A stretch of DNA of 64,000 nt. Origin: Asterias rubens. Lineage: Eukaryota. Below the pieces are notes generated by a model, which searched no databases, was not told where the DNA came from, and saw only the letters and a program-made list of their open reading frames with translations. Of this stretch, positions 7,574 through 56,786 are shown piece after piece. The stretch's first letter is position 1. Every line of letters begins with the position of its first letter. The position numbers were made by a program, and so were the translations under genes. The stretch is from assembly GCF_902459465.1 (NCBI RefSeq), contig NC_047081.1, positions 10,540,001 through 10,604,000 of the forward strand, given 5' to 3'.

Positions 7574-10500
7574 CTAAAAGTCGGTCACGGTGAGATCATT
7601 GAGCGGGATCTCAACGAACTGTTCTTGGTCTGTAATGCGTCGTTTGTCCATCCACTGGTCCTGCGATGGCGGGGTACCGGGCACCACCTGCGAGGACGAC
7701 TTACGAGCTGTCAGATGGAAGGATGCTTTTCTACCCGGTGGCCTCTCACCCTTGGGAGGTGAAGCAGTTTTAGGAGGATCAGAAGGAGGTCGATTGTTGT
7801 TCACCTTCTGAGACAAAATGATCAAAAAAATGCATGTTTAAAATTATGGAATGGATGTACCCAGGGTACTCCTAGAATTATTAAGTTCATTCAGTGATTG
7901 CTCCACGAGGAGACGATAGCGGAACGAACGTCTTAGTTCTAGGAGATACCCAGAGGTGCCAACATTAACATCTTGCGATCAGGGAGATTTTGCAATCAGC
8001 AATCATGTAGAGTTGGCAGCTCTGTGCACCATCCCATTGGTCAGATTCTCCAACCCCCCCCCCCCTCCCTCCCTCCACCAGGAAATATAGGTTTTCTCGG
8101 TCAAATTCGGCAAATAAGCAGCCAATTTCATTTTCATGCGTTCGAATTAAAGTTGTTTTTTGCCTCTCCAGTTGTTACTCTGTTTCAAATTCAGAATTCG
8201 GCCATTCAGTTTTGGTTTGAGATCGAGTCAAATTCCTTTAGCACTCTGTTCAATTTTGTGGATCGTCCTTCTTTTTCGAGACACAAACGCATCAAGAAGC
8301 GAATCAACTTGAAAGCTGCTGTGAATTGTTAAATTGAATGATTAGTTAAAGCGAATGACGCAACATTAAATTTGACTTATGATAAAACAAAATCGAATGA
8401 CCCTTTTCAGTAGCATTCGATTTCGCGCGAAATAGAATAGCTTGATGGTTAAATTGGCTGTTCATTTTCCGAAATTGGCCGAGAAAACCTATAAATAAAT
8501 TAATAAATAAATAACTGTTTCTTATGTTTCAGTACACAACTTCTTGCTCCCCATCATCAAATTCACATTACCTTTAGAGGTCCTGGTGATAACTCCCTTT
8601 CGACACAAAACACAGAGAGGTTGGGCCCAGCAGAGGCAGCCTGCGTGGTGGGAGAACAACGGTAGAGAAATTTAAGCTGAAGCGATTATTTTGTTTTTCA
8701 AAGTAGGCACAATAATCACTGGGAAATCTTTGCCAAAATATCGCTTTCGGTAATTGTTCTTTCCTTTGTTCATGTAAGAAATGTTAACATCCTTCTTTAG
8801 ACTTTGTGCTCCAAATTCTTTGTGGAATCTCACTCTCCCCTTTATTATGGCATGTTTTGCAAAATAAAAATGGCCTTGCCCCCCTCAAAGATGGCATCCA
8901 GGCCATCAAATCGAAACTTGATTTGTCGGTTCTGTTCACATTGACAGTTGGGCCTTATGAGAATATATGAAGTAGGTGGAGTTTGTACTTTGAAACTATT
9001 GATCGTTAAGATTTTTACCTGTGTCTGCTGGAAAAGACTGTCACAAGGCGAAGAACTAGGAGGTGATCGAGACACAGCTCGTAGTGTAGTCTGTATGAAG
9101 TTGTTGACTCGAGGTGCTCGTAGGCCAGAGATGGTGTAAGGCTAAATGTAACACGATTAAGAAAACTCATTTAGGCCTGTGTGCTTCGTTTTTTTTTAAA
9201 GAGCACCAATACATTTTCTCCTTGATAAAAGGAGGAAATTGTAAATTTCTACTTGAGCATTTTAAGGGCACCAAGGGCTTACGGAAGCATGCATGGAATC
9301 AGCGCTTTACGTCTCTGTGCTTATGTCAAGCGTCTTTCACAGGTTAGCTGTGTGCGCATGCGTACGCCATGTTACTAGCATTCTTCGCTTACTCAGCTGG
9401 AAAATCAGCGTTTGTACTGTAAGCATAGAACGGTGATCAAAAGCGCATAATTCTGTAGTAAGCGAGTCCAGAAATTAGGCCCAGGGTGTCTGATTTACCT
9501 CACTGAACTGTTGGATACAAATTGATCAAACCTGTAAGGCTCCCAAGATTTTGAGAAAACTTAAGAACAACTTACCGGTGGTATGTCAACTTTTGGTGGC
9601 GGTGTCGTCACAAAGATGTTTGTGAGAGATCTAGTCAGAGGTTCACCAATGTATGGATTTGTGAAGTCCGCCTCGTTGCTATCAGTCATGAGCATTGCCC
9701 CAATCTAACAAAGAATTAATTAAAGATTTAATTTAAAATGAGCATAAGATGGTCACCCACATTGCAGTCAACTGAGGACCTACTGTTCCTCTCTGTTGTG
9801 ATGGTCAGAAACCCCCATGCTCTGACACCAGGCCTTAAAATAACTGAAGGCACCTACAGCAAATGCCACAGTGCCCTGCGCCGTCCTTTGCCAAGTACCA
9901 ACACAAATTTAAATTTTCTTCATAGAAAGTGCCCATTGCCAGAGAAAAATTACTTTGCCTTTTCAAGAGTGAAGTTCTAACTTACTGAAATTGCTACCTT
10001 CTTTATGCTTCTTCTTACCTGATTAGTCTTAATGTGGTACGGAAAGTACTCGTTGGTTCGATCGGGACGTGTTAGAACCAAGAAGATCATGTGTCCAAGG
10101 AATACGGCCGACCAGTAGATGCCGTTAACAATCTTAGCCCTGTAAGCCGAATGGAAGACAATTAATTAGTTACATAGACATGTTAGGATTAATTCTAGGG
10201 TATAGGGGTAGAGTTACAACTGACCAATTGGGCCAATTTTATGAAGTTGCTAAACATATTTTGGAGGGGTTAGCAGAAACGGGTAACCAGCCAAAATTAA
10301 GTGTAGATTTGTTTGCCATTACTCACCTCTTACTTGTTAAAAAGTTGCTAAGCACAATTTTTGGGAGCTTAGCAGAAATGGGTAACCAGCAAGAATTAAT
10401 TGTAGATTTGTTTGCCAATACTCACCTCTTATGTGTGGGTATGAACTCATTGGCCACGCCTATCATGATGGGTTCAGCAACGAACCAAACGGCGAAGAAG

Positions 10501-13500
10501 AGCATGAACGGCACGTAGAATTTGAACTTTGATGCGAAATGTTTGATGGTGAAGAAGACACAGTAGTAAAGCCACACCACACCTGGAGAATAAGAATAAA
10601 TATAGTTACAATTAATAACTAAATCTTCATAGCGCATTTTTACAATCAGTGCGCTTTACATTAGTGCCTTGGTCATTGGGCCTATAACATTCCTGCAATC
10701 TTTTTCAGCTCCTTTTGGGCGTAAACGTCAAGGGCTGCCGTTCAGCTCTAAGGCTTTTCATACACAATATCAACTTTCTACTCTCACACGTACACTTTTA
10801 TACCCCTGGGTGAAGAGAAGCAATTATAGTAAAGCATTTTGCTCAAGAACACAAGTGCCATGGATGACCGGGATTTGAACCCACACTCCAATAGAACTTG
10901 AATTCAATGCTCTTAACCACTTTGATGTTCTTTCCACCATGGATGCAAATACCTTTATAAGTCTTATTTGACATACAACTTTATTGGTTCCACAATTTCT
11001 GGTACAAACTTAGAAACTTTTGACTTACCGATGCAGCGCAGTACAATCAGAGCCATGGCGGCCGGGCTGTCATAGATAAACATGACATCCCGGGGGTCAA
11101 AGTTCGACTGAGCGTAGACATAAAGGAAGATGAACGTTCCTGCATAGAGGCATGTGAAGATGGCCAGCTTGATGCTGCCAGAGGTGCTTAAACGTCCTCT
11201 AAAGGAGGAGGGCAAAGAAGAAATACATTTATAAGAAACTAAGAGAGGTTTCAATGTCTCGTTATGAGTAGTCTGAAAATAACTGGTGGTTAACGACTCG
11301 GTGTTCGATCAGGATGCTCTGATCTGATGGTCTATGTTTCAAAATTTCAAATTTCCTACTAAAAATAAGAATGTCTCATAGAACACCCAGATATGCGTCT
11401 TCTATTCCTATGCAGAACAATTTCATCAGAAATTATTATATTCTTAAACTCTAAAGTCGTTCTCTTTGAAAAGTGGTCCGCCAATCAACGGACTCAGTAT
11501 GAAAGTGCCCTGGGTAGCCATGGGATGAAAAAAAGTCCGAGGCCTCCCCAGGGCTGTATTTCACAGGGATATGGGATACAGTATGAAAAGGGCTTTATTA
11601 GGTGACATCACATCCACACCCCCCCCCCCTCCCCTTACAGCCACCTACCTGGTGATTGTGTATCCCTTTCCCACCAGCATCAGCATCAGAACAAAGAGTA
11701 CATCACCGAAAGATGACACAATATGTCCTGATAAGACACAAACACGGAAAATGGTTTGTTAGTAACACTTAATAAACTTAATGGCAATAAAAAGGTGTGG
11801 TTAGCAGCAGATTTCGAAAACATTATGAGAAACACTTCACTTACTTCAAAGTTATGTGGTTTTGTAAAAAGATCTCACTTTTTTTGTTGCAAATTTTAAT
11901 CTGAGAAGCCTCGAACTGTCAGTCACAATTTACAAACTTCCTTATAGAGGTGGCCTTTACCAAGAAGAAAATGCCTCGATACTCTTGCATTTAAAAAAAC
12001 GAAGCATCGATCAGGTCAGGCCTGCCATTTTGTTCAAGCGTCGAAAGTGTTTGGATTTGTTTGCGATAAACACTCTTACCTGTGGTCTTCAGTCCAGGCA
12101 TTTCAATGCCATCCCCAGCGAAGCTCGCTAAGGCGATGATGATGAATATAAGTGCAATGAGCTGCATGCAGACAGATGCAAAGAAGAGCTGATAGGTAGA
12201 GTGCAACAGTCTCTGCTTGGCCAGTTGGACTGCAATCAAGAATTTTGTTTTTTAGGATCAGTAGGATTTGAAACTTTGCAAGGTGGGTGTGATATTATTT
12301 GCTTTGGCCCACTTGGCTACACCCAGCTCATAAATATTCAGTATTGTATAATTTGCATACAGCTCATGTCAAAGGTCACACCATGACCTGCATTCCCAGG
12401 TTTAGTAAATAAAATGTTTTCCCAGTATGGCAGCTCCTTTGCACATGGGTGTGTATTTATTGTCCGTAAAACCCATGCCAAATACACCAAAGTGGGAGTA
12501 TAATTAGGCGAGGTTTGTGGTAGCATCATGTGTAAATATCTTTTTAGTAGTGTTGGTTTTGAAAAGAAGCGAGTTGTCAACCGCCTTTTCTTTCAGAACC
12601 AACACTACTCAAAAGAGACTACACACTGGCGATATTATGGAAAACCTCACTTACTAATAATAGGATCAATCATTTATTTCAATTTCCCAATGAAAGACAA
12701 TTAATCACAAACACTTTTTGTTTGGGGTGGGGGTACAGTACATTTTGTAAAAAAAGCAAATAAAAATATGCTTACATCTATAATAAACTCCTGTCAAAGC
12801 CATGAGGAAGTAGAGAATGGCAAAGGCGATACTGGTCTGCAAAGTGACTGTGATAATAGAGAGGGTATTAAATCAGGGACTTGTCGAACGAGGCAACTTT
12901 TAAAACACATTTGAACTTGGAGGCAACCAACTGCAGTGCCAGCAGAAGGAACACTTTGATAGCACAAGAGTCATTCTTCAACATCCCTAAGAAAAATATT
13001 TGAACACCTTCTTGGAGATTGCCTGGAACTGGTTGCCTGTAAATTGCCTCGTTTATTGGCCATGTTACAGTGGGGCCAAGATATGGCATCAGTGTATTTT
13101 ATGACCTGTTATTCTGGTTTGTAGAGCAGCTCAAAACAATAAACTAAAATGGATTTCTGTGATTTATTATAATTCTTATCTTTATTTGGAACACAAAAAA
13201 AAAAGACATATAAAACAAAGCATGACATTATAATCACAATCACAGAATACATTAATAAAGAATATCAAAGTGAGAAGACAATAACGCAAGGTAAAATAGA
13301 ACAAAACCATTACAGAAAAAAAGACAAAAATAATTAGAAGTTAAAATCAAAACTCACAACGCTCATCTGCGGAGAAGTGTTTGTCGATGGGACGGTCTCC
13401 GTTCGTCATATTCAGTTTGTATTGCATGTAGATGCCTTGTCTAGGACTAATTCCATTGCAGTTGGCAATGTTGATAAACCACCAACGGGCCCGGGGTGCC

Positions 13501-15883
13501 ACAAAGTGGCGAGTCCCGGTACAGACCAGCATCTGCCAGAAACCAATTAGAAGATGTGAAAAGGTTTTTTTCTGTATAAGTCATGGTCCTTGACAATGTC
13601 CTGAGAACATTAACAATATTTCCTCGGCCACAGAGAGAAAGTAAACCCCACCTTACCCCAGAGTGGGTTACACTTCTATAAACTTCAAAATCAAACTGTC
13701 AAACATGGTTTATAGTGGACCACAAAGCTAGTACACATGACCAACAAGTGCCACAGCTGGCACTCAAATCCAAACTCTCCTGATCAGAAGCACCAGAGCT
13801 TGAGGTGCTCTTAACCTTTTGGCCATGACATGTCAATCCTTGCCCTGATGCCCAAGCTTAAAAGAAGTTACAAGTTGTGTAGATTGGGAAGACTGGAGAT
13901 TTTGAAGCATAAATGCTGTAGAGTATTTCATATGGGCCAGTAGAGACTGGATATAGTGTTGATCACCCATGTTTTACTGAAATATTGGAGGGGCTTGCTT
14001 TGGTGTGTGTTTTTAGAAACAGAAGCTGAGCTGAGCAACAGTAACTCACCTGCTGGCCATCCTCCGTCTTGTTCTTACAGTTGTGACTACTCAGAGTTGT
14101 CACAGCATTGTAATTTGACGGAATCTGCTCAAGCTTCTCAACGCAAGTCTAGAAAAGAAAAAAGAAAAGAAAAAAGACTCGTAATTCAAGTCAATATTGG
14201 ACCTTCCTGATTCCTGACCTTAACACAATTTCACAAGCTCATAATGCTATAAATCCAAAAATACTGCTTTGAAAATTTCTTTGGTAAGCGAAAAATGAGT
14301 GAGGCACCACTTGCAACAATGTAAACTTTATAGAATTTTGGCTGGTAATTAGTAACAAGATTTGTCTGTACTTTGCAAGTTTGTATGCTTAAATTGATTA
14401 TAAAATTTGGCCTTGGTCATGCAATTGTAATTATGCTCACAGGTCAAAGTTCCAAAAGTTAAAAGTTAGCCAGACTTAATGGAAGATGCAGTGCTTTTGC
14501 AATGAAGAACAAAGTTACATTGAGTTGTCAACTTCTTATTTGTTTTCACCTTTTGGTCAATCTGTTGTAATTTGAAGAAATACATTTCAATAACTTACGA
14601 GTTTGTCTTGGTTGGCTCGTACATACGGCCACTGCGACTCAGCATCGTTGAAAAACAGAACTTGGTAACAACAATCCTCCTGTACAAAAATGTTCAGAAT
14701 TAGGATTTACCGAGAACACTCCAGCATTTTTTTTTCTTGACATATTTTCTTAATTTATTTGAAAATTGTTTTGTACTCACTTCAATAACTTGTTCCTTTT
14801 CTATATCATTGTCTTTGTCTCAAAATTATTAAAAGGTAGAACTTTTCATTCAAAAGTTTATCTTTTCAAAGAATTACATTAGCCTCAGTTTTGAATGCTT
14901 AGGCTTTTGTTTGTTTAGCATTATCGCTTAGCTTTTAATTTGTGTACTAGTAGTAAAGGTTATCTTTTTCCCAGCCCAATTAAATCGTTCACTCTAACTA
15001 AATATGAAAAGAGATGATTTATTTTGTGAGCAGGAGCACTTTAAACATGATACAAAAATTTAACACAGAACTATAATGTTTTAATGGCCACTTACAGCGG
15101 GATACTTGTACTCATACCACAGTTGGCCAAGTTCATTCGGTTCGAACACAAAGCGCTCCAGGAATTCCATATCCTACAAACAAAACAAAATGTAAGAAGG
15201 GAACTTTTTCATGCCTAGTGCTGTAGCTAATTTTTTAAAAGCAAAGCAAACATTACAATTTCTGTGAGTGGCTTATCAAGTGCTGAGTTGGCCTTCTATA
15301 AAATATAGAAATTGTAACCTAATTTATTGTAGCGCCATCACTCAGTATCAAATTGGGCCACAGTAGAATTGTATGTTTTGTCAATCAAAAGGCATAATTA
15401 CATATTATTTCTACTGTCTTTTTTCTAAAGACTAATCTAACCTACTGTAAACTATTTATTAATATGTCATGGTTATCAATAATATTAATAAACAAAGTAC
15501 AATTTAATTAAATTAGACAACATATTATATAGTCGACATCACATAGAAATATCGGAATAAAATGAAAAATAAATAAACCAACAGCAAAACAAATTGCCAT
15601 TATCATCACTGAAATGGTTTGGTCAAAGTTACTTGAAGCAAACTCAGGGAACCTCGTAAAAACTATCAAAAGCTGTCAGCGTGCGTAGCGAAAAAGAGAC
15701 CCGGGCGGAGAGCCAACTTACACGGCAGGCCGGGCAGGCCGGGAAGGGCCGCGCCCGCTCAGAAATAGCAGCTGCACTCACCTTGCTCGTGTCAACCACT
15801 CCCTCGACGTACTTGCCGTCGATCACTGATGACGATGTTAACATCAGCACAAACGCTGTCATCAAAACAGCAACACAGGTCAT
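7574..15883 (-). CDS. TMEM145: Transmembrane protein 145-like (GPR180/TMEM145 family, signal peptide plus 7TM), about 595 aa
   Basis: 15 phase-consistent exons (minus): 15782-15883, 15096-15173, 14599-14679, 14050-14148, 13358-13532, 12776-12847, 12080-12229, 11649-11727, 11029-11198, 10426-10582, 10019-10139, 9576-9704, 9019-9090, 8572-8640, 7574-7807 (1788 nt). Motifs: GKYVEG, FLERFVF, ARWWFINIANC, KHFSADE, RLLHSTYQLF, GKGYTITRGRLS, KIVNGI, LTRP..NEYFPYHIKTNQ. The two small tail exons (9019-9090, 8572-8640) are supported only by splice signals and phase. Confidence 0.9.
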
Positions 15884-47555: not shown

Positions 47556-50500
47556 TCAGTTAGTTGTTGTAGCTTCTTCAGGTTTCCAGGATTGGGGCTC
47601 TGTAGGCGTCGAGACAAAACGCATCTTGGGAGTTTTTGGAGGAGGGACATCTCCAGCTCGGGATTTTGACCTTGTGACGGGGCGCTGCGGGTGGTCGATT
47701 TTGAAGATATCGGGCTTGCCACTCTTCTTTCTTAATGCTTGATGATCTGTCAAAACAAACAAAGAGAGAGAAAATAAACAAACAGGTCAGGTTAATAGTG
47801 AAATAGACGCTTCTAAAATGGCCGCGATTGAATATTGCTAAAATTTCGTTAAAAAACAGCACTTCACGAACTTTATGATTTTTCAAACCACACACACTTA
47901 GTACTTTCCTGCTGAAAGTAAGTCCACAATCCTCTGCATTTTAGATCTGGGTCCAACTTCATGCTCATAGCTCAACTTCTCGTAACTCAATGGGCTGTAA
48001 GCGCAGAATTCTGCACGATTCGACAATAGCGTCATACTTCCAACGCTTGCTCATTATTTACCAAAGACTAAAATCTGACTAAAAGCTCTATGTGCTTGGT
48101 GAAACCAAACCAGTTGGTAACCAGCCATAGGCATTGAAACATGGTTGTCACTCTTTCTGCTAACCATCTGCACTAATCATTTTGTAAGAAACAAAGCCAA
48201 TTTTCCCAGACTTTTTCTTATTTTTGGTCTTCATAGACCTGTTTATCAACAGTCGCCTTTTTCCCCCACTCACCTTCCTGTTCGTAGGAGTATCTAGAAT
48301 AGCCATTAGGTGTTCCCATTCTTCTCTCGTCCTTCTGCGTCGGGTCCGGTCTGTCCAGCTCCCCGTACCCATTCTGGAGGATCATGTTGGGTGGGGGTTG
48401 GCTGTGAGGGCGCTCTAAGGGTGCGTAATACTCTTGGCTCTGCGTGCGTTTCCAGTAATCGGACTCGTTTGTGACGGCACCACGGATCATGTCCAGCACC
48501 AGCTCTTTTTCTGTAGAAGCAAATAATAAAATTTGGAATAGGAGTTTTTTGATCAACAATCTAAGGTCCATGACGACCATGGCTGCATCAAATCAAAACC
48601 ATCCTTGTTTAGCGAGGTGACAGCAGGCACCAACCGCATCTCTGTATGCAGCAATTGTGAATGGCCACCAACTCTCAGAATTCTGATGAATTGTTTCTCA
48701 GATCAAAATGTTTTTGGGTGAAATTTATTTCTCAAAAAAGTTTATACCATCATCAGCTGCAGTGCTTCTCACCCATGTAATTTTGTACGGTCAACTTTTG
48801 GAGTATTTGCCAATCTACATCGTTGCATATAAGTCCTTAGATTTTGGAAAGCAAATTATCAAAAGCATTTTACGAGGAACACTTGCCCAACCATCTTGGT
48901 TTTGACACAAAATAACAGAGCAAAATTAAATTCTAAAATTAAAAAGCTAAATTAATTCCATAAGCCAACAAAAAGAATTTCCATCGAACTAAAGGACTAA
49001 ATCCATCGATCAATTCTGGAGTAAAATTTAATCAATTTTTCCATAGTAATAATGGAGCACTTACCTCTTTCTCCTGCCGAACACAGCCATGATTGAACGG
49101 CATTGATGGAATCTGTCTGCAGTATCTGACATAGCATCTCCATAACCTGCACACAAGGAGATAAACAAACAGAGATGAAAAACTGAAGTGATATTCTCTT
49201 GATATTTGGAGCTCTAACAATGAGATGGGTAGAAATTTCTACGCACCAGGTCATAGCTCTTACTCCGACATGCATGCCAGATGTCATGCAATTCTTACAT
49301 TAACAGGGGTGGATTTCACAAAGGTAGTCCTAACTTAGGACTAGTCCTAGGCAATGCTAAGAGATAGGACCAGTCCTAAGTCCTAACTTAGGACCAGTCC
49401 TATCTCTTAGCAGTCCTAGGCAATGCTAAGAGATAGGACCAGTCCTAAGTCCTAACTTAGGACCAGTCCTATCTCTTAGCATTGCCTATAGTCCTAACTA
49501 AGGACCAGTCCTATCTCTTAGCATTGCCTAGGACTAGTCCTAAGTTAGGACTACCTTTGTGAAATCCACCCCAGGCATGATATTTGGTTCTTAGAACAAA
49601 GTAGGAAAATAATTTGGGGGAAGGAAGAGTTGACCTACTTGTTCATCCATTGTTAGTTTAGGAGCCTAATACATTTCCAGGCTATTTAATCACAAATTTT
49701 CTGATTTTTCCCAAGGGTAAAAAACTGTACGCTCCAGGAAGCTGAGATGGTTTTTGGAATGAATTGAATGGCCCTGTGAATGAATTAAATGGCCCTGTGA
49801 CCAGGGGTAATAATGTTGAAAGTGCTTCGAGGCGCCCTTTGGGTGTATAAAGTGCTAGATAAAAACCAACTATTCTTATTCTAAAACCATCTAGATCTTC
49901 TAGAACACCCTTGAACTTACCAGGGCCTCCTGGTCCATCTCCGGTACGATGTGCTGGAACAGATCCCTCGGTCGTTGTTTCTGACGGGAGAAACCACGAC
50001 TCATCGCCCTGGATGGTGGGGGAAGAAGCCTCCCAGTCTCGGCCGAGTAGACGCTGGTTCGTCTCGGCTGGACTTCTTGCTGTTCCTTGATCTCCTTTGG
50101 GAGACCCATACCTGCTTTCTCTGTGAGCTGACGCAACTCCTCACGCCAAAGGTCCGTAATGGGTACTATGCATCGTAGAAAATAAACAATATTACAGAAA
50201 CTGTGTTGTTTTGTTTCTCCTGCCTTTTTTTTTATTAAACGGCGCTTACTTTTGATTGTGATTGTAAAATTTGATTTTAACAACTTGCATTAGCCCTCCG
50301 ACTCTTGAAACATTTTCCAACCAATGACCAACCGTTGGAAACCATCCAAGTACTAGAGTGATTGATAGTGAATGGTGGTTACAACTGTGACATAAAATGG
50401 TCAAACAGTAGAAGGGTTAATGTTGGGTTTCACACTTTTTTGTGATGTGGTTTTTGTTTTTTTTCCACTAGTTCAAGGTGTGTTGAAAAGAAATCAAATC

Positions 50501-53500
50501 ATGTGGCCAAAGTTTGATGAAATAGAAATAACTGCTTAAATCAACTGACCATAAGATGATATTGTTTAAAAGTAAACAGAGATATGCAAATTTTTGAGCG
50601 AGTTCATTGGTGATAAACTAATCACAAGTTATTATCATTATAAGTTAAGGTGCAATATTCAATGGTGGTGTATGAGGAACTCAAAGGCCATTTTTGAAAA
50701 CACGGCTCCCACTCTGGCTATGGCTTTGAGGCCATGAAACTTAGCCAGAGTCGTAGCTGTTGTATCAAAAAGGGCCTAAGACAGAAGAAAGAGAAGGGTG
50801 TGTATTACATTAGACCTTGATCATGGGCCTGCCATTTTGAAGATATGATGATGGAACCACAACAGCTTTCACAAAAGAAATCTATTTGGAAAATGAGCTT
50901 TGGATCAAAGCCATTTTTATCTACTTTAAGACTGAGACCAAGCCGGATGATTTACTAGCAAGAATTCCTTCATGGACACACGTCAGCATTTCTTGCAGTG
51001 AACACAAAAACGACGAAACAACACACACACAATATAAAAAAACACACACACAAGAAAAACAACTCACTGAGTCCAAATTTGGGATCTGCCTTTTCTTTGA
51101 ACCCCAGTGGGTAAGTGCTGAGCCCGGTCAGCGTGTTTATGGGATAACGATGTGAGTTGAGGGTAGGGTTCTGATTCTGAATTCGGTATCGGTGCGGGTT
51201 GACAGCCGGTATTCGGTGCGAGTACATCTGTCGAGACTCGCCAGTAGAGGGCCTCTTGAGGAGTTGTTGCGGATTGGTGACCATGTGCTCGTCGTGAACT
51301 GCGCATATCGGCATGTCGTTCAGGCCTGAGGAAAACACGCATTTATTCACAACGGAGAATATCTTATGTCGACCAAGATTGGAGTCCACCCACGAGAATT
51401 CCGTCATCTCAACCCCCGTCTGTCTCCGCGAGTAGGCCCGAACCCTGAACATCATGGCTTGAAGACGCACTCCCGACTACCACATCTCAAACTCTAAATA
51501 CGGGGCAACACAGGCCTATGTATGTTTTTTTTTTTTAAAGGGCAAGAGCACCAAGGCATTTTCTCCTTGGAGGCACCCTAATTTCTACCGGAGCATTTCA
51601 AGGGCACCAAGTCAATGACCAGGGGCCATGGAGCCAATCGCCTCCGTTGCCTCCTTGAATTATCAGGCTTGGCATTAATTGGACACAGAGTGACTCCCTC
51701 GTGCTTATGGCAAACTAGACAAACTCGAAAATAGGCCAAAACAATTTTTTCCCAAAATGTTTTCAACACATGCGAGTCAGTGCCTTTCCAAGTAGTTAGT
51801 ATTTAAAGATCAGTCACAGAAAAAAAGTTTTGAAAAGAGCAACATGCAGAAATTTCTTGCAAATTATTCTGGTCATTAATGGAAAGAGAAAAAAATTGAA
51901 AAAAATTGCAGTACGCTTGGCTGATTGAAGGAAGTTTTAAGAAGCATTTGAGTTTGGCAGAAGTGAAATGTGAAATTATCTCGTCTTTTTGCTACAAAAT
52001 GAGTTAGTTGGTCCCAGAGTAGTATTTGTTGTTTGATTTCAGTTAATGGTGGGTATCTTTAAGTTCCATTTTAGAAATGACAAGGGTGAAATTAGTACAT
52101 GTAAAGGATTTCAGACGAACAAAAGAATGAATTAGTAACATGCAAGTTAGTTTAGTACAAGTAACACCAAGAGACTATTGTGTGCATTTGAGTCGGGCTG
52201 TCACATGTAAAGTAAATGTCCGTACCTGTGATTTTAACAAAAAGTCAAAACTAACAAGTACAGATTTTTTTTTTCTTCTAGTTTTGTGCTCACAGAAGAA
52301 CTTTCATGCTATATTCTGATCACATTACCCTTTTTTTTTATTGAGGCAACCGATATAAGCATTTGGCATTTTGTGGAGTCTTCAAACGCTAATTTCTTAA
52401 ACTTGACTATATTTTAGAAGGATTTTTTTTGTCTGAGCTTGAAGCTTGATAAATCTTTTTGTTTGTGCCCAATAAGTTGTGTGGTTAAAAATGTATGTGA
52501 TTTGGTATGGAATATATGCGGATGGGGGCCCATTGAAAAGAGAAAGAAATTCTGGGCATCAGAACAACTCTACAGAGAGGGAGTTTGGCCTTGACTCTTG
52601 AAAGTCTTTGGCAAAACATCCACTTTTGGAGAGAGAATTTTCCACTTCACTGCACCAAGACTTATCTTAAAGTGTGCATTAATCTTTATTACAAAAGTTA
52701 GCTAGTGGCCTGACATTTTAAGAAGAGTTTTCATGAGAGGCTATGAATAAACAAAGTCTTAAGCCACAATACAATTCACTATAATATACAACTCATCTTT
52801 AAACGAGTTTGAGCGCTTTGTTGGGGAAATGAAGCCCAAACAAAGTAAAAATTAATTTGTTTAGAACTGCCAACTCAAATGCACCTTTTCTGTTACAACA
52901 GAGAGTTAGTAAGAAGGGAATGGGGGAAACATGCAACTAGTGTTTGGAGTTTGTTGAGGTGTTAGACAACGACTTACTCATGCCAAACTGAGGGTCGGCC
53001 CTTTCTCGCATGGACAACGGGAAACGGCGGTAGTGCTTTTGGCTGTCGATCTGATTGATCTTGTGATTTTGCAACGGCGGATTGATGTGGTTCGGGTGGT
53101 AGTTGATTGCCTGGACGGGCAGTTTAACGGGGAGGGACAAGCGAGTCTGGTCGAGGCCACTGCTGGTGGCGGGCCTGCTCCTCAGCTTGAGACGGGGGTT
53201 GACGACGAAGCCCTCGTCGTGGACGGCACAGATTGGGAAATCAAGCAAACCTGGATAATTCATTGTTTACAGAAATCAGAATTAATTATCAGTTAATGGG
53301 AGACTTTGGAACGCTTGGTGGCAGCATACCACGTCAATTTTCATTGTCGACTTTTGTCGATTTTTTTTTGACGATTTTTGAGCATGCGCATCAATACCAA
53401 GAACAATGGATTTCACCAGGTAAGTCTGCTGCCACCAAGCGTTCCAAAAGTTATCAATCCTTGGGAAAAATAATATTTTATCAAATACAAGGGTTGACCT

Positions 53501-54926
53501 ATATACATGTATATACACATGGTGCAGGCTTTAATGGAAATTTCAGCAAGATTTTTCACAATTTGGTCGAATTTTTCAAAGAGTTGGAAATCAGACTAGA
53601 GTAGACTTCTAAACAAGTAAGTTTGTATTGCCATTAATTTTTTAGAGTGATTACCAATCGACCAAACATAAGCTTCCCTTCAAAGGCACTGGACACTATG
53701 GGTTTATTTCTCAAAATATATTTTTACTGAAGTAGTTTTTGACGAAAGGGGTAGCTTTTCACTAAAAAAAAAATACTTCAGGCCTGAATACGTTTATGAG
53801 GCATTAAAAGCAAACAAGTTTGTGAAAAGATTTGGTTTTTTTTATTCAATATTCTCTTGCAACGTCGAGGACCTGCAATTGAGTCCAAACTCACAGGTTT
53901 GTTATTTTATGCATATGATGGGATACAACAAGTGAGAATACTGGTCTTTGACAACACCAAATTTGTCCAGTGCTTTTAAAATGGTGGACACTTGTGCAAG
54001 GTGCTCTATACATTATAGGCCGACTGGTTTTTGACAATCCAAACTTAAACCTTCCCTTTAAAAGGACAGGTGAGACTCACTTTAAACAGGACTGTAAAAA
54101 AAAAGTGCTTCCTCCATTAGTCAAAGAGACTCTTGTGTGCTGAGCCAATAAATAATTCATTAAATCTATGGCCGGCGTGTCTGGGGCTCGTAGCGTCTCT
54201 AGGCTAGAGCAAACTAGTCAATTGATCAAACAGAGTCATTCGCTCTATCGTTTATTTCTCTTTCACAAAGTGCCCGATACAGACAGCTGGCTTTGTTTCC
54301 GTCAGTTTTTGAGCCATGGCTTAACAAAGAAAAACCTTTGAGCTTCAAGAGTTGCCGTTTATAACTGAAGGTTTTCCTTGGTTGATACTTTGGGTAGATG
54401 TTAAAGGGAAGGTAAAACATTCTTGGCAATCTCTCTTTAAAGGCTGTGGAAACTATTGGCAATTACTCAAAATAAATTAGCATACAACTTCATTTGGTAT
54501 CGAGTAATGGGGAGCTGTTGATAGTATAAAACACTGTGTGAAATGGCTCCCTCTGAAGTAAACATAGTTTTCAAGAAAGAAGTAATTTTCTTCGAATTTG
54601 ATTTCGGGACGTCAGAATTAGAATTAGAGGTCTCGAAAATAATGTCATTTTCAGTTGACTTCAATATGATCTAAATTGTAATATGTCTGAGATTTTTGTT
54701 TACCTTTGATATGTCGGACTCTACCAGGGTGGGGGTTGTGACGAGCGAAGAAGGCACTCTGACTCAGGTTGCCGAACCGAGCACTGGCCATGGTGGCCGG
54801 CCGGTTCCCTGCAAAGTCCTTCCTCGTCATAGGGAGATGGTGGTTCTTGGTGTTATGTTCTGGTACAACACCCAGAGTGCTGCGGACCACCAGCGGGTCA
54901 CCATTGGACGGGGTGAAAACGGGCAT
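47556..54926 (-). CDS. TBATA: SPATIAL-domain protein, TBATA/C4orf17 family (likely pro-orthologue of both), 411-502 aa depending on use of duplicated exon 2
   Basis: Exons (minus): 54704-54926; 2a 52978-53250 and/or 2b 51068-51325; 49921-50165; 49065-49146; 48274-48510; 47556-47746. Motifs: FGNLSQSAFFARHNPHPGRVRHIKGL..PICAVHD, WREEL..L, LCQILQTDSINAVQSWL....REKELV. The acceptor at 54941 followed by an in-frame TGA supports ATG 54926 as the start. Confidence 0.88.
49307..49571. mobile_element. Fold-back MITE (GGGTGGATTTCACAAAG TIR, CAG TSD) with internally amplified palindromic modules
   Basis: More than 60 bp of perfect terminal inverted repeat. CAG at 49304-49306 and 49572-49574. Interior consists of AGTCCTAA/TTAGGAC and CTATCTCTTAGCATTGCCTA modules in both orientations. 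Confidence 0.88.
51068..51325 (-). CDS. SPATIAL gene exon 2b (258 nt, phase 1-1), paralogous to exon 2a
   Basis: TTTTCCTCAG|GCCTGAACGAC ... GGACTCA|GTGAGT; encodes GLNDMPICAVHDEH...FKEKADPKFGL. Confidence 0.85.
52978..53250 (-). CDS. SPATIAL gene exon 2a (273 nt, phase 1-1)
   Basis: TCCAG|GTTTGCTTGAT ... GGCATGA|GTAAGT; encodes GLLDFPICAVHDEG...MRERADPQFGM. Confidence 0.85.
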
Positions 54927-56786
54927 GGTTCAGTTCCACTTCTGTATAAGCAAAATAAGATAAATAAATGAACCAACACATACAAATACAACAGTTCATT
55001 TTCTACCTCAAAGGCTAAATACAGCCAGTCCATTATTAAAACTCATAAAAATAAGTTTTATTATAGTAAGATTCATTGAAGGCGCTTGAACAATTGCAGA
55101 AACATTTTAAGACTATTATGAATTACGAGACCAATTTATGAATGCATTCAACAGCCACTGTCAGAAACACTTGGCAATTCCTTTTTCTTCACAATAAAGT
55201 CTAACTGGGTTGTTTTACATTCATTGCACAACACACTCGAATTATGGCTTCACATCCCATTTGAAGGATGCAGCAATAATGGTGTCTTGATTAAAGGCAC
55301 TGTACATGTTTGGTAATTGTCAAAGACCAGTGTACTCACTTGGTGTATCCCATCATAAGCAAAAAATAACAAGCCTGTGAAAATTTGGGCTCAATCGGTC
55401 ATCGAAGTTGCGAGAAAATGATGAAAGAAAAAAACAAATGGACGAATTTGTGTGCTTTCAGATAGGAATAAAATAATTCTAGATAGAAGTCTTCCCTTTA
55501 AGGACACGAGTGTCAAGCAGACCAGGACTCGAACCCACTCTCATGTTGATAAGAAAAACCAGAGCTTTGGGCCCAGGTCTTAATAATGAACCTTTTCTCC
55601 ATGTTTTTGAACCTTAATGAACCTATTTTCCAAATGTCCAACTGCTCCAATTCTCCACAACACGAACACACACACCAAAATGTTGCTTTTATCAAAACAT
55701 GAGCATGAGAGACAAAAAGAACAAAAGACACCCCTCAGAAAAATCCCAGTTACGCCTAAAATACACTTCTGAACTGTGTACTGATACTATGTAATATAAA
55801 GTGATTGTTTCCAATCAATGTATGTGTAAACACAAACTGAAAAACCTACTGGCACAAATCAGGGTTTTGCTTGCTCCGATGTTTGTTCACATTTTCTTGA
55901 AAACGTGGCCAAACAACAACATACCCGAGTTGCCAATGAGTTACAGCCGAGTATTTACTCAGGTTTTGTCCGTTTGTTTTCTTTGCATGTTATAATACTT
56001 GGGTCGTCTAGAGGACTGCTGATGGTTTTCGTTGACTTTAACGCTTTCTCCCCGCTGGCATTTCAGCTGTGTTTGTTCACTTATTTATAAACACGGCATA
56101 TGTTAAAACTTATTTATTATAATGCCTTTTTTTTAATTGTGTTTTTTAACAGTCAATGTGTCATTTACAATTTTTTGATAGAAAATTGGCTGGGGTTCAA
56201 TTTGGGGTAAAACATCCCACAAGACAGCAGTTCTTGTTAAGACCAGATTTAAAATGAGCAAAAAAAAACACAAAAAAAAACCACCACTATAGTGTCACTA
56301 AGAACTGTTTTGCATTGAACGAGCACTTTTAGAAGGTTTACTATCTCATTGTCTGATGGGTCATACTTCCATACTCAACAAAATTAAGATAATTATATGG
56401 GAGCTTAAGTCAACATTTGAAACTTGTTTTTTCTCTGATGAGGATTAAAAAATACAAGACTGCTCGACTTGTCTGGCTGTAAAGTTTCTGGCCTGGTTGC
56501 TAAGCAAAATTTAGAAGATAACCATTTGTGACATTTAACAAGATTTTGGATGACCAATTGCTAGATAATCAAATTTGTCATCACCAAGCTTTAACAGTAC
56601 CAAGCTTACTCAGAAAAGAGGGAGCTTCTTAAATTTAATGCTAAATAAAACAATGGACACGACTTTAAAATCACAACTTTACAATATAGACGCGTTCCTA
56701 GGTTGCTGTGGAGTCATGACTAATGTAATAGTACATCCACGCACTTAATATGATTATTTGACTTCTAACAACATTAACAATCACAG

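What the first reader, a model, noticed from the sequence alone, without database searches (positions are those of the whole stretch)
51068..53250. Tandemly duplicated, diverged exon 2 in the SPATIAL (TBATA/C4orf17) gene: a probable isoform switch
Seen: two homologous exons 1.65 kb apart, each with intact splice sites, both phase 1-1, both stop-free (91 and 86 codons). They share the start (GLLDFPICAVHDE vs GLNDMPICAVHDE) and the end (MRERADPQFGM vs FKEKADPKFGL), but the middle ~55 residues have diverged completely. The RHNPHP-HIK half of the SPATIAL motif lies in exon 1, so each exon 2 supplies an alternative second half of the domain. Preserved terminal motifs amid heavy divergence imply selection on both copies (inference). 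From recall, human C4orf17 reads HIKGLNNIPICTVND, which is closer to 2b. The gene could make 2a-only (416 aa), 2b-only (411 aa) or 2a+2b (502 aa) proteins. This would parallel, inside one gene, the vertebrate TBATA/C4orf17 gene duplication. I know of no description of this arrangement.
Basis: partly seen in the sequence, partly recalled or inferred. Interest (0 to 1): 0.75.

Follow-up and report, generated by a model that had tools for sequence, protein, structure and literature searches.

The report
Alternative duplicated exon in starfish TBATA
The starfish TBATA-like gene carries two diverged copies of its second coding exon and normally splices in one or the other; this swap is old and shared by all echinoderm classes, but it is an ordinary kind of alternative splicing that public gene annotation already lists.

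Summary
On the minus strand, exons 2a (53250-52978) and 2b (51325-51068) are homologous (36% identity, E 1e-15). Both are phase 1-1, stop-free and flanked by AG/GT.

The window is Asterias rubens LOC117303849, a SPATIAL/TBATA family gene. RefSeq already lists the 2a-only (416 aa) and 2b-only (411 aa) isoforms. For A. amurensis it also lists the 502-aa form with both.

RNA contigs show exon1-2a-exon3 and 2b-exon3 joints. In one run they form an exon1 -> {2a | 2b} -> exon3 bubble with no listed 2a-2b joint, and the 2a:2b depth ratio differs between runs.

Both copies occur in protein models of all five echinoderm classes, and lie in the same order in the two other genomes I read (Acanthaster, Antedon). 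One hemichordate locus without gaps has a single exon 2, and only one type is annotated in amphioxus. The duplication is therefore echinoderm-specific and is not the counterpart of a vertebrate TBATA/C4orf17 split.

Both copies are under purifying selection (dN/dS 0.13 and 0.04). Copy 2a keeps the ancestral PVxAINY motif and 2b keeps YPINTxTGL. Both encode low-confidence, probably disordered segments.

Verdict: a real, ancient, mostly mutually exclusive exon pair, and a new member of a known kind. What enforces the exclusivity is unknown. The scan found similar exon pairs in this genome's Cav2 gene.

The parts
54704..54926 (-). Coding part of exon 1 (ATG at 54926-54924). It ends with the SPATIAL N-terminal motif FFARHNPHPGRVRHIK plus the first base of a Gly codon. 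Its donor is shared by both alternative exons.
   Evidence: Sequence. Pfam SPATIAL profile positions 1-16, E 5e-4. 100% match to XP_033644129.1. The RNA contig of run X1 ends exactly at 54703.
52978..53250 (-). Exon 2a: the upstream, fast-diverged copy (273 nt, phase 1-1, 91 codons). It keeps the ancestral PVxAINY motif and has lost YPINTxTGL.
   Evidence: In run X1 a 331-nt contig of depth 100.6 holds 31 nt of exon 1, all of 2a and 29 nt of exon 3. Present in A. rubens isoform X1. The 2a clade has 98/95 support. dN/dS is 0.13 against Acanthaster.
51326..52977 (-). The 1652-nt intron between the two copies. It holds a repeat with very high RNA word depth at about 51455-51804.
   Evidence: Depth is 0 at 52155-52854 in all four runs, so this stretch is removed from the RNA.
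51068..51325 (-). Exon 2b: the downstream, conservative copy (258 nt, phase 1-1, 86 codons). It keeps YPINTLTGL and YPLGFKEKA as in hemichordates, amphioxus and molluscs.
   Evidence: In run X2 a 338-nt contig joins 2b (51068-51321) directly to exon 3 (50165-50082). X1 holds a 316-nt 2b contig of depth 41.8, and X4 holds a 2b contig. Present in A. rubens isoform X2. dN/dS is 0.036 against the L002 species.
49921..50165 (-). Exon 3, the common acceptor for both alternative exons. It encodes WREELRQL and SVYSAETGRLLPPPSRAMSRG.
   Evidence: Pfam SPATIAL profile positions 72-158, 37.8 bits against a cut-off of 27. The 1445-nt contig of run X1 starts exactly at 50165.
49065..49146 (-). Exon 4.
   Evidence: Exact rebuilding of the 416-aa RefSeq protein from GT-AG bounded pieces.
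48274..48510 (-). Exon 5.
47556..47746 (-). Coding part of exon 6, with stop codon TGA at 47558-47556.

Best explanation
This is the Asterias rubens TBATA-like (SPATIAL family) gene. In the echinoderm stem lineage its second coding exon was duplicated in tandem. Since then the two copies have been used as alternative exons that are mostly mutually exclusive. Exon 1's donor is spliced either to 2a or to 2b, and whichever is chosen is spliced to exon 3. This gives proteins of 416 aa (2a) or 411 aa (2b) that differ only in an 85-90-residue segment between the RHNPHP-HIK motif and the WREEL helix. Both exons are multiples of three, so the reading frame does not enforce the choice, and forms with both (502 aa) or neither (325 aa) stay in frame. 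The choice must therefore be made by splicing regulation, which is still unidentified. The downstream copy 2b is the conservative one. The upstream copy 2a diverged fast early on and was then frozen. Each copy keeps one of two ancestral short motifs better than the other: 2a keeps PVxAINY and 2b keeps YPINTxTGL. Because the segment is predicted with low confidence and is probably disordered, I infer that the switch exchanges short binding motifs and so changes partner choice or localisation. Shown here: the homology, the splice sites, the spliced RNA forms, the distribution across the phylum and the purifying selection. Inferred: coordinated exclusivity, regulation by tissue or stage, and the functional consequence.
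For: Homology and exon anatomy.

Gene identity: the spliced window exons equal XP_033644129.1 (X1) and XP_033644131.1 (X2). Pfam SPATIAL is met by exon 3 alone.

RNA:
- Run X1 shows joints 54704>53250 and 52978>50165 in one contig of depth 100.6.
- The exon-1 contig ends at the donor, and the exon-3 contig (depth 125) starts at the acceptor.
- A separate 2b contig (depth 41.8) maps only to the exon and carries 30-31 unaligned letters on each side.
- Together these form a graph bubble exon1 -> {2a | 2b} -> exon3.
- The 2a contig runs 29 nt into exon 3 without a branch, which it could not do if a 2a>2b junction were present at appreciable depth.
- Run X2 joins 2b to exon 3.
- The 2a:2b depths are 100.6:41.8 (X1), 4.4:12.8 (X2) and 0:5.3 (X4).
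- Intron depth is 0.

Conservation:
- 2a-only and 2b-only models exist in asteroids, echinoids, ophiuroids, holothurians and crinoids.
- The genomic order 2a then 2b is the same in Acanthaster (L001) and Antedon (L003).
- In the exon tree the 2a clade has 98/95 support and 2b plus the crinoid downstream copy has 91/87.
- The gap-free Glandiceps locus has only one exon 2.

Selection:
- dN/dS is 0.13 for 2a. For 2b, pN is 0.15 against saturated pS versus Acanthaster, and dN/dS is 0.036 versus the L002 species.
- All 15 listed differences in run X1 are synonymous.

Motifs: alignment; block M1: 51% for 2a against 31% for 2b; block M2: 5% against 45%.

Structure: pLDDT in the exon-2 parts is 44-71 (2b form) and 46-54 (2a form).
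Against: - The RNA evidence comes from assembled contigs, which drop rare variants. Only 15 of 45 joints were printed. The exon1>2b joint was not shown directly; I infer it from the contig layout and from the RefSeq X2 models.
- Run metadata are coded, so the differing 2a:2b ratios cannot be tied to tissue or stage. X1 is also a different species label from X2 and X4.
- RefSeq holds models with both exons (A. amurensis X3, four L. variegatus isoforms, D. antillarum, H. leucospilota) and with neither (Acanthaster X3, Antedon X3). Exclusivity may therefore be leaky or differ between species.
- No enforcing mechanism was found. Both exons are multiples of three, so a frame shift cannot enforce the choice. 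The intron between them is 1652 nt. All sites are GT-AG. A test for long-range pairing of the one conserved intronic element was no better than shuffles.
- Orthology of the crinoid upstream copy with 2a is weak (57/58 support; an independent crinoid duplication has AU p 0.074).
- The functional reading rests on low-confidence models and motif conservation only.
Confidence: 0.8

Rival explanations
1. The two copies are independent cassette exons rather than a coordinated either/or pair. Each is included or skipped on its own, so the forms with both and with neither are regular products.
For: Both exons are multiples of three, so all four combinations stay in frame. RefSeq models with both or neither exist in several species, including the 502-aa A. 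amurensis X3. No enforcing mechanism was found.
Against: In run X1, exon 2a stands at about 70% and 2b at about 30% of the summed depth. Independent choice would then put the 2a-2b junction in about a fifth of transcripts. Yet the 2a contig continues unbranched into exon 3, and no 2a>2b joint is among the best-supported joints. The depths of 2a plus 2b (142) roughly equal that of exon 3 (125). Most annotated isoforms carry exactly one copy.
Confidence: 0.12
2. One copy is a decaying or unused pseudo-exon, and its presence in RNA and in gene models is splicing noise.
For: Pfam recognises only 2b weakly and 2a not at all. Copy 2a has lost the YPINTxTGL motif. Run X4 shows only 2b.
Against: Both copies are stop-free and splice-competent in all five echinoderm classes. 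dN/dS is 0.13 for 2a and 0.036 for 2b. In run X1, 2a is the major form. Full-length 2a-only transcripts were assembled independently in four holothurian-like Logan entries (cluster 8).
Confidence: 0.03
3. Both copies are constitutively included, so the gene simply has an internal repeat.
For: Single-product gene models in Diadema antillarum and Holothuria leucospilota contain both copies.
Against: A direct 2a>exon 3 joint skips 2b, and 2b contigs lack 2a. RefSeq has X1 and X2 single-copy isoforms in Asterias and ten other species.
Confidence: 0.02
4. The 2a/2b split is ancient in deuterostomes and corresponds to the vertebrate TBATA versus C4orf17 paralogues, with one exon lost in hemichordates and amphioxus.
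For: The tree does not resolve where 2a sits relative to hemichordates.
Against: Both 2a and 2b share the ambulacrarian insert (Y.x.N.NP..L) with hemichordate exons, and share the echinoderm-only ending ADPxFG. A tree with all echinoderm copies as one clade is as likely as the best tree (AU p 0.50). Glandiceps has one exon 2 in a gap-free locus. Amphioxus, tunicate, mollusc, annelid, brachiopod and nemertean proteins carry a single exon type that holds both motifs.
Confidence: 0.03

Closest known systems
Tandem duplicated exon substitution / mutually exclusive exons (for example the events catalogued in human: PMC9741552, PMC5740500, PMC9013439)
   Same: The pair consists of adjacent homologous exons of similar length and the same phase. 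One or the other is spliced in. The pair is ancient and both copies are under purifying selection. The isoforms are identical apart from the homologous segment.
   Different: Both exons are multiples of three and lie 1.65 kb apart, so neither frame-shift/NMD nor steric hindrance enforces exclusivity. No competing RNA structure was detectable. Models with both or neither exon exist. The swapped part is a low-confidence, probably disordered segment rather than a folded module.
Mouse Tbata (SPATIAL) splice isoforms Ttv3 and Ttv5 (PMC2964569)
   Same: Same gene family. The isoforms differ in an internal protein segment through alternative splicing. The protein is known to bind Uba3 and KIF17.
   Different: According to that paper, the mouse isoforms arise from alternative splice acceptor sites and differ by 34 aa. 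They do not come from a duplicated exon pair. I found no duplicated exon 2 outside echinoderms.
RefSeq (Gnomon) isoforms of LOC117303849 and its echinoderm orthologues
   Same: They are exactly these products: A. rubens X1 (416 aa, 2a) and X2 (411 aa, 2b); A. amurensis X1, X2 and X3 (502 aa, both); Acanthaster X1, X2 and X3; and others.
   Different: The annotation only lists the isoforms. It does not say that the two exons are paralogues, date the duplication or note the complementary motif retention. I found no paper on it.
Cav2 mutually exclusive exon pairs in the same genome (earlier finding s1-172676)
   Same: Tandem-duplicated alternative exon pairs in the same sea star genome, also judged to be an old example of a known trick.
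   Different: That case is a different gene, and its exons encode folded channel modules. I did not re-examine it.

Membership tests
SPATIAL / TBATA family (Pfam PF15256) | Match to the Pfam SPATIAL profile above the gathering score | tested here: met
   Exon 3 alone scores 37.8 bits against a cut-off of 27. Exon 1 matches profile positions 1-16 and exon 2b matches 18-59. The full-length protein carries precomputed PF15256.
SPATIAL / TBATA family (Pfam PF15256) | Conserved motifs FFxRHNPHPxRVxHIKGL, PICxVxD, WRxEL, YSxxTGRLIPPPSRAMSR and MLCQILQT | tested here: met
   These are invariant or nearly invariant columns in alignments of 66 and 50 family members, with the Asterias isoforms as first rows.
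Mutually exclusive tandem-duplicated exons | Neighbouring exons that are homologous, of similar length and in the same phase | tested here: met
   273 and 258 nt, both phase 1-1, 36% identity, E 1e-15.
Mutually exclusive tandem-duplicated exons | Mature transcripts carry exactly one of the two | tested here: inconclusive
   The forms exon1-2a-exon3 and 2b-exon3 are shown, and the bubble layout in run X1 has no listed 2a>2b joint. However, contigs drop rare forms, only 15 of 45 joints were printed, and RefSeq has models with both or neither.
Mutually exclusive tandem-duplicated exons | A known enforcing mechanism: frame shift plus NMD, steric hindrance, U2/U12 incompatibility or competing RNA structures | tested here: not met
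   Both exons are multiples of three, and the forms with both or neither stay open. The intron between them is 1652 nt. All sites are GT-AG. The best duplex of the only conserved intronic element is no better than shuffles: 8 of 40 and 6 of 40 shuffles were as good. The RNA-structure search was limited to that one element.
Mutually exclusive tandem-duplicated exons | Both copies conserved under purifying selection across species | tested here: met
   Both are present in five echinoderm classes. dN/dS is 0.13 and 0.036.
Counterpart of the vertebrate TBATA / C4orf17 paralogy | 2a and 2b each group with one vertebrate paralogue in an exon tree | not tested
   No C4orf17 sequence was obtained. Indirect evidence speaks against it: the duplication is confined to echinoderms.

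The most novel reading that the evidence does not exclude
The pair may be a case of subfunctionalisation inside one gene that has lasted since before the living echinoderm classes split. The ancestral exon carried two short binding motifs, PVxAINY and YPINTxTGL, and the duplication let each alternative exon keep one of them. If so, echinoderms make two TBATA proteins with separated partner sets, for instance kinesin KIF17 and the NEDD8 E1 subunit UBA3, which are the two partners known in mouse. The echinoderm isoforms would then be natural separation-of-function variants that could map TBATA's unknown interaction sites.
Probability: 0.25. Interest if true: 0.5.

Novelty: new member of a known kind. 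Interest (0 to 1): 0.3.

Why it matters
TBATA is a poorly understood protein of ciliated and germ-line tissues, and no binding site on it is mapped in the one paper I read. This is a very old natural pair of isoforms that differ only in one 85-90-residue segment, with each keeping a different ancestral motif. That points to which parts of the segment matter and gives a ready-made experiment: compare the partners and localisation of the 2a and 2b forms. For splicing biology it adds a phylum-wide, frame-neutral exon pair whose exclusivity is not explained by the usual mechanisms. Beyond that it is an ordinary example of a well-known way of making isoforms, and the isoforms are already in RefSeq.

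Tried and rejected
- Competing RNA structure. The only intronic element conserved between Asterias and Acanthaster is window 54233-54206. Its best duplexes fell upstream of 2b in both species (-27.3 and -30.2 kcal/mol), but shuffled queries did as well in 8 of 40 and 6 of 40 trials, and the pairings differ between species. I dropped it.
- Hidden second exon 2 in hemichordates. None was found in Saccoglossus, but that locus has N gaps in both flanking introns. I repeated the search on the gap-free Glandiceps locus and again found none.
- C4orf17. No protein of that name was among the 120 listed hits of either protein search, and no paper holds both names.
- Relatives' DNA. The ENA contigs carrying 2a-type ORFs (P0001, P0004) came back without DNA. 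In P0001's contig a 138-aa ORF lies about 1 kb downstream, consistent with 2b but not verified. Look-ups of non-longest isoforms failed.
- Pfam on single exons. Exon 2a gets no SPATIAL hit and 2b only E 0.1. This reflects short length, not absence of homology.
- ORFs on the plus strand over the two exons. They have no support from any search and were taken as chance.
- Structure searches of the AlphaFold models were not run, because the exon-2 parts are low confidence.
- The window has no N runs.
Full report
**Observation**

- Exon 2a is 53250-52978, preceded by ttatccAG and followed by GTaagt.
- Exon 2b is 51325-51068, preceded by ttcctcAG and followed by GTgagt.
- They are 273 and 258 nt long. 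Each is open only in the frame that continues exon 1.
- Their products align end to end with 32/88 identities (BLASTP E 1e-15 for the single comparison; 38% in MAFFT).
The statement that the middle has 'diverged completely' is too strong.
- The window has no N runs.

**The gene**

- Exon 1 (ATG 54926 to 54704) ends in FFARHNPHPGRVRHIK plus one base.
- Exon 3 (50165-49921) encodes WREELRQL...SVYSAETGRLLPPPSRAMSRG.
- Against Pfam SPATIAL (PF15256), exon 1 covers profile positions 1-16, exon 2b covers 18-59 and exon 3 covers 72-158. Exon 3 alone passes the gathering score, at 37.8 bits against 27.
- A profile of 2a plus 2b searched against 1.84 billion representative proteins found 17 hits. These led to named proteins.
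- Splicing exon 1, 2a, exon 3 and three further exons (49146-49065, 48510-48274, 47746-47556) rebuilds Asterias rubens XP_033644129.1 residue for residue. That entry is LOC117303849 isoform X1, 416 aa. Using 2b instead, the spliced exons 1, 2b and 3 equal the first 242 residues of XP_033644131.1, TBATA-like isoform X2, 411 aa; the remaining exons are the same in both forms.
- The window is therefore the A. rubens TBATA-like gene.
- All four combinations (2a, 2b, both, neither) stay in frame.

**RNA evidence**

I laid the Logan contigs of four RNA runs on window:49880-55100.
- Run X1 carries a species label different from X2 and X4 and shows about 1-3% differences from the window.
  - One 331-nt contig of depth 100.6 holds 31 nt of exon 1, all of 2a and 29 nt of exon 3. 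Its joints are 54704>53250 and 52978>50165, both GT..AG on the gene's strand.
  - The exon-1 contig (depth 86.8) stops exactly at the donor.
  - The 1445-nt downstream contig (depth 125) starts exactly at the exon-3 acceptor.
  - A separate 316-nt contig (depth 41.8) maps only to 2b and has 30-31 unaligned letters on each side.
- This is the layout of a graph bubble: exon 1 -> {2a | 2b} -> exon 3.
  - The 2a contig runs unbranched into exon 3. It could not do so if a 2a>2b junction were present at appreciable depth.
  - By the same logic, the upstream flank of the 2b contig should be exon 1. This last step is inference, because the flanks were not printed.
- Run X2 joins 2b (51068-51321) directly to exon 3 (50165-50082) at depth 12.8, and holds 2a at depth 4.4.
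- Run X4 holds only 2b (depth 5.3).
- A seawater metatranscriptome (X3) holds pieces of both exons, plus intron pieces next to 2b. These are unspliced RNA or DNA.
- Intron depth at 52155-52854 is zero in all runs. The huge depths at 51455-51804 and 53205-54779 are repeats.
- The 2a:2b ratio differs between runs (about 70:30, 26:74 and 0:100). This fits a regulated switch. However, the run metadata are coded, contig depths are rough, and only 15 of 45 joints were printed.

**Public annotation**

RefSeq already lists these forms. I classified 43 models by motif.

| Species | 2a only | 2b only | Both | Neither |
|---|---|---|---|---|
| A. rubens | X1 | X2 | | |
| A. amurensis | X1 | X2 | X3 (502 aa, junction ...QFGM-S-LNDMPIC...) | |
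| Acanthaster | X1 | X2 | | X3 |
| Patiria | | X2 | | |
| S. purpuratus | X1, X2 | XP_789620.2 | | |
| Lytechinus pictus | X2 | X4, X5, X6 | | |
| L. variegatus | X5 | X6, X7 | X1, X2, X3, X8 | |
| Diadema | D. setosum | | D. antillarum | |
| Amphiura | X1 | X2 | | |
| Holothurians | Logan transcripts | Apostichopus X2 | H. leucospilota | |
| Anneissia (crinoid) | X2 | X1, X3, X4 | | |
| Antedon (crinoid) | X2 | X1 | | X3 |

- Most models carry exactly one copy.
- I found no paper that mentions TBATA together with sea urchin or with C4orf17.

**Age and origin**

- The genomic order 2a then 2b is the same in Acanthaster (L001: 4471-4737 and 5757-6020) and in the crinoid Antedon (L003: 2928-3143 and 4219-4482).
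- In a maximum-likelihood tree of 35 exon-2 peptides:
  - the eleutherozoan 2a copies form a clade (98/95) on a long stem;
  - the 2b copies group with the crinoid downstream copy (91/87), with an internal order close to the species tree;
  - the crinoid upstream copies are very long branches that join 2a only weakly (57/58).
- An independent crinoid duplication is not quite rejected (AU p 0.074). Holding all echinoderm copies as one clade costs no likelihood (p 0.50).
- Hemichordates have one exon 2.
  - The Saccoglossus locus shows none besides 9097-9348, but it has N gaps in both flanking introns.
  - The gap-free Glandiceps locus has only 13401-13652.
  - All Ptychodera and Glandiceps isoforms carry the same type.
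- The alignment shows two shared features:
  - an ambulacrarian insert (Y.x.N.NP..L) shared by hemichordate exons, 2a and 2b;
  - an ending ADPxFG shared only by the echinoderm copies.
- The simplest reading is one duplication on the echinoderm stem, after the split from hemichordates. The vertebrate TBATA/C4orf17 pair therefore cannot be the counterpart of 2a/2b. I could not obtain any C4orf17 sequence to test this directly.

**Selection**

- A. rubens against Acanthaster:
  - 2a: dN 0.094, dS 0.72, ratio 0.13;
  - 2b: pN 0.15 with saturated pS of 0.81;
  - exon 1: ratio 0.05;
  - exon 3: pN 0.086 with pS of 0.84.
- A. rubens against the closer asteroid behind contig L002: 2b has dN 0.016, dS 0.44, ratio 0.036.
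- All 15 differences listed for run X1 in the four exons are synonymous.
- Both copies are therefore under purifying selection.

**What differs between the copies**

- Non-echinoderm exons carry two motifs, ...IPVNAINV... and ...HPINTITGL... In hemichordates these read MPVHAISY and YPLDIITGL.
- Measured against hemichordates, 2a keeps the first block better (51% against 31% identity), and 2b keeps the second (45% against 5%) as well as the YPxGFKEKA block (60% against 36%).
- So 2b is the conservative copy overall. Copy 2a has lost one motif and kept the other.
- AlphaFold2 models of both isoforms have confident helices only at WREEL and in the MLCQILQT region.
- The exon-2 parts score pLDDT 44-71 (2b) and 46-54 (2a), apart from a short hairpin across the exon 1/2 boundary in the 2b model.
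- The swapped segment is thus probably disordered and carries short conserved motifs.
- In mouse, Tbata binds Uba3 and KIF17, and its isoforms differ through alternative acceptors, not duplicated exons (PMC2964569).
- That the echinoderm switch changes partner binding is my inference, not a result.

**Mechanism of the choice**

- The reading frame cannot enforce exclusivity, because both exons are multiples of three.
- The intron between the copies is 1652 nt.
- All sites are GT-AG.
- In the last eight bases before the AG, the 2a acceptor (aattatcc) holds more purines than the 2b acceptor (ttttcctc); over 20 bases the pyrimidine counts are similar, 10 and 11. This would suit a regulated upstream exon.
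- Between Asterias and Acanthaster the introns are unalignable except for two stretches: a 28-nt element in intron 1 (54233-54206) and about 30 nt after the 2b donor.
- The intron-1 element's best predicted duplexes are no better than shuffles.
- What enforces or biases the choice therefore remains unknown.

**Verdict**

This is an ancient, echinoderm-wide pair of tandem-duplicated, mostly mutually exclusive exons in the TBATA-like gene. It is a new, undescribed member of a well-known kind, and its isoforms are already in RefSeq. The same scan found comparable exon pairs in this genome's Cav2 gene (s1-172676; not re-examined).

Noticed in passing
window 54206-54233 (minus strand); L001 3794-3821: A 28-nt element in intron 1 (core TGTTTGATCAATTGAC) is the only intronic stretch well away from an exon that aligns between Asterias and Acanthaster. 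It occurs once in the window. Its function is unknown, and it shows no significant long-range pairing.
   Followed up: partly
window 51455-51804 and 53205-54779: Intronic stretches with RNA word depths of 10^4 to 10^5 in all three asteroid RNA runs, with many variant joints and loose ends. They look like members of abundant transcribed repeat families (transposable elements) inside introns 1 and 2a-2b.
   Followed up: no
window 49306-49572: A MITE-like structure in intron 3: 76-nt terminal inverted arms that are 96% complementary, with internal 69-nt direct repeats and nested palindromes.
   Followed up: partly
window 52978-53250 against L001 4474-4737: Synonymous divergence in exon 2a (pS 0.46) is much lower than in 2b (0.81) and exon 3 (0.84) for the same species pair. 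This hints at extra constraint on the RNA of 2a, such as splicing enhancers or structure. The sample is small.
   Followed up: no
L004 15530-15610 and 17781-17861: In the Saccoglossus locus the 27-codon exon 4 appears twice at 100% identity, each copy next to a 50-N gap. This is probably an assembly duplication.
   Followed up: no
P0053 and P0049 (holothurian 2b-type exon): The holothurian 2b copies end ...GFKDLAN/V... and lack the EKADPxFG ending found in the 2b copies of the other classes and, with small variations, in all 2a copies. This suggests a shifted donor or a rewritten exon end in sea cucumbers.
   Followed up: no
alignment: Hemichordate and echinoderm exon 2 share an insert of about 10 residues (Y.x.N.NP..L) that is absent from chordate and protostome TBATA. 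It may be a sequence signature of Ambulacraria.
   Followed up: partly
window 54941-54943 and upstream: The exon-1 contig of run X1 continues 107 nt beyond an acceptor just upstream of the ATG. The gene therefore has at least one further 5' untranslated exon, which I did not map.
   Followed up: no
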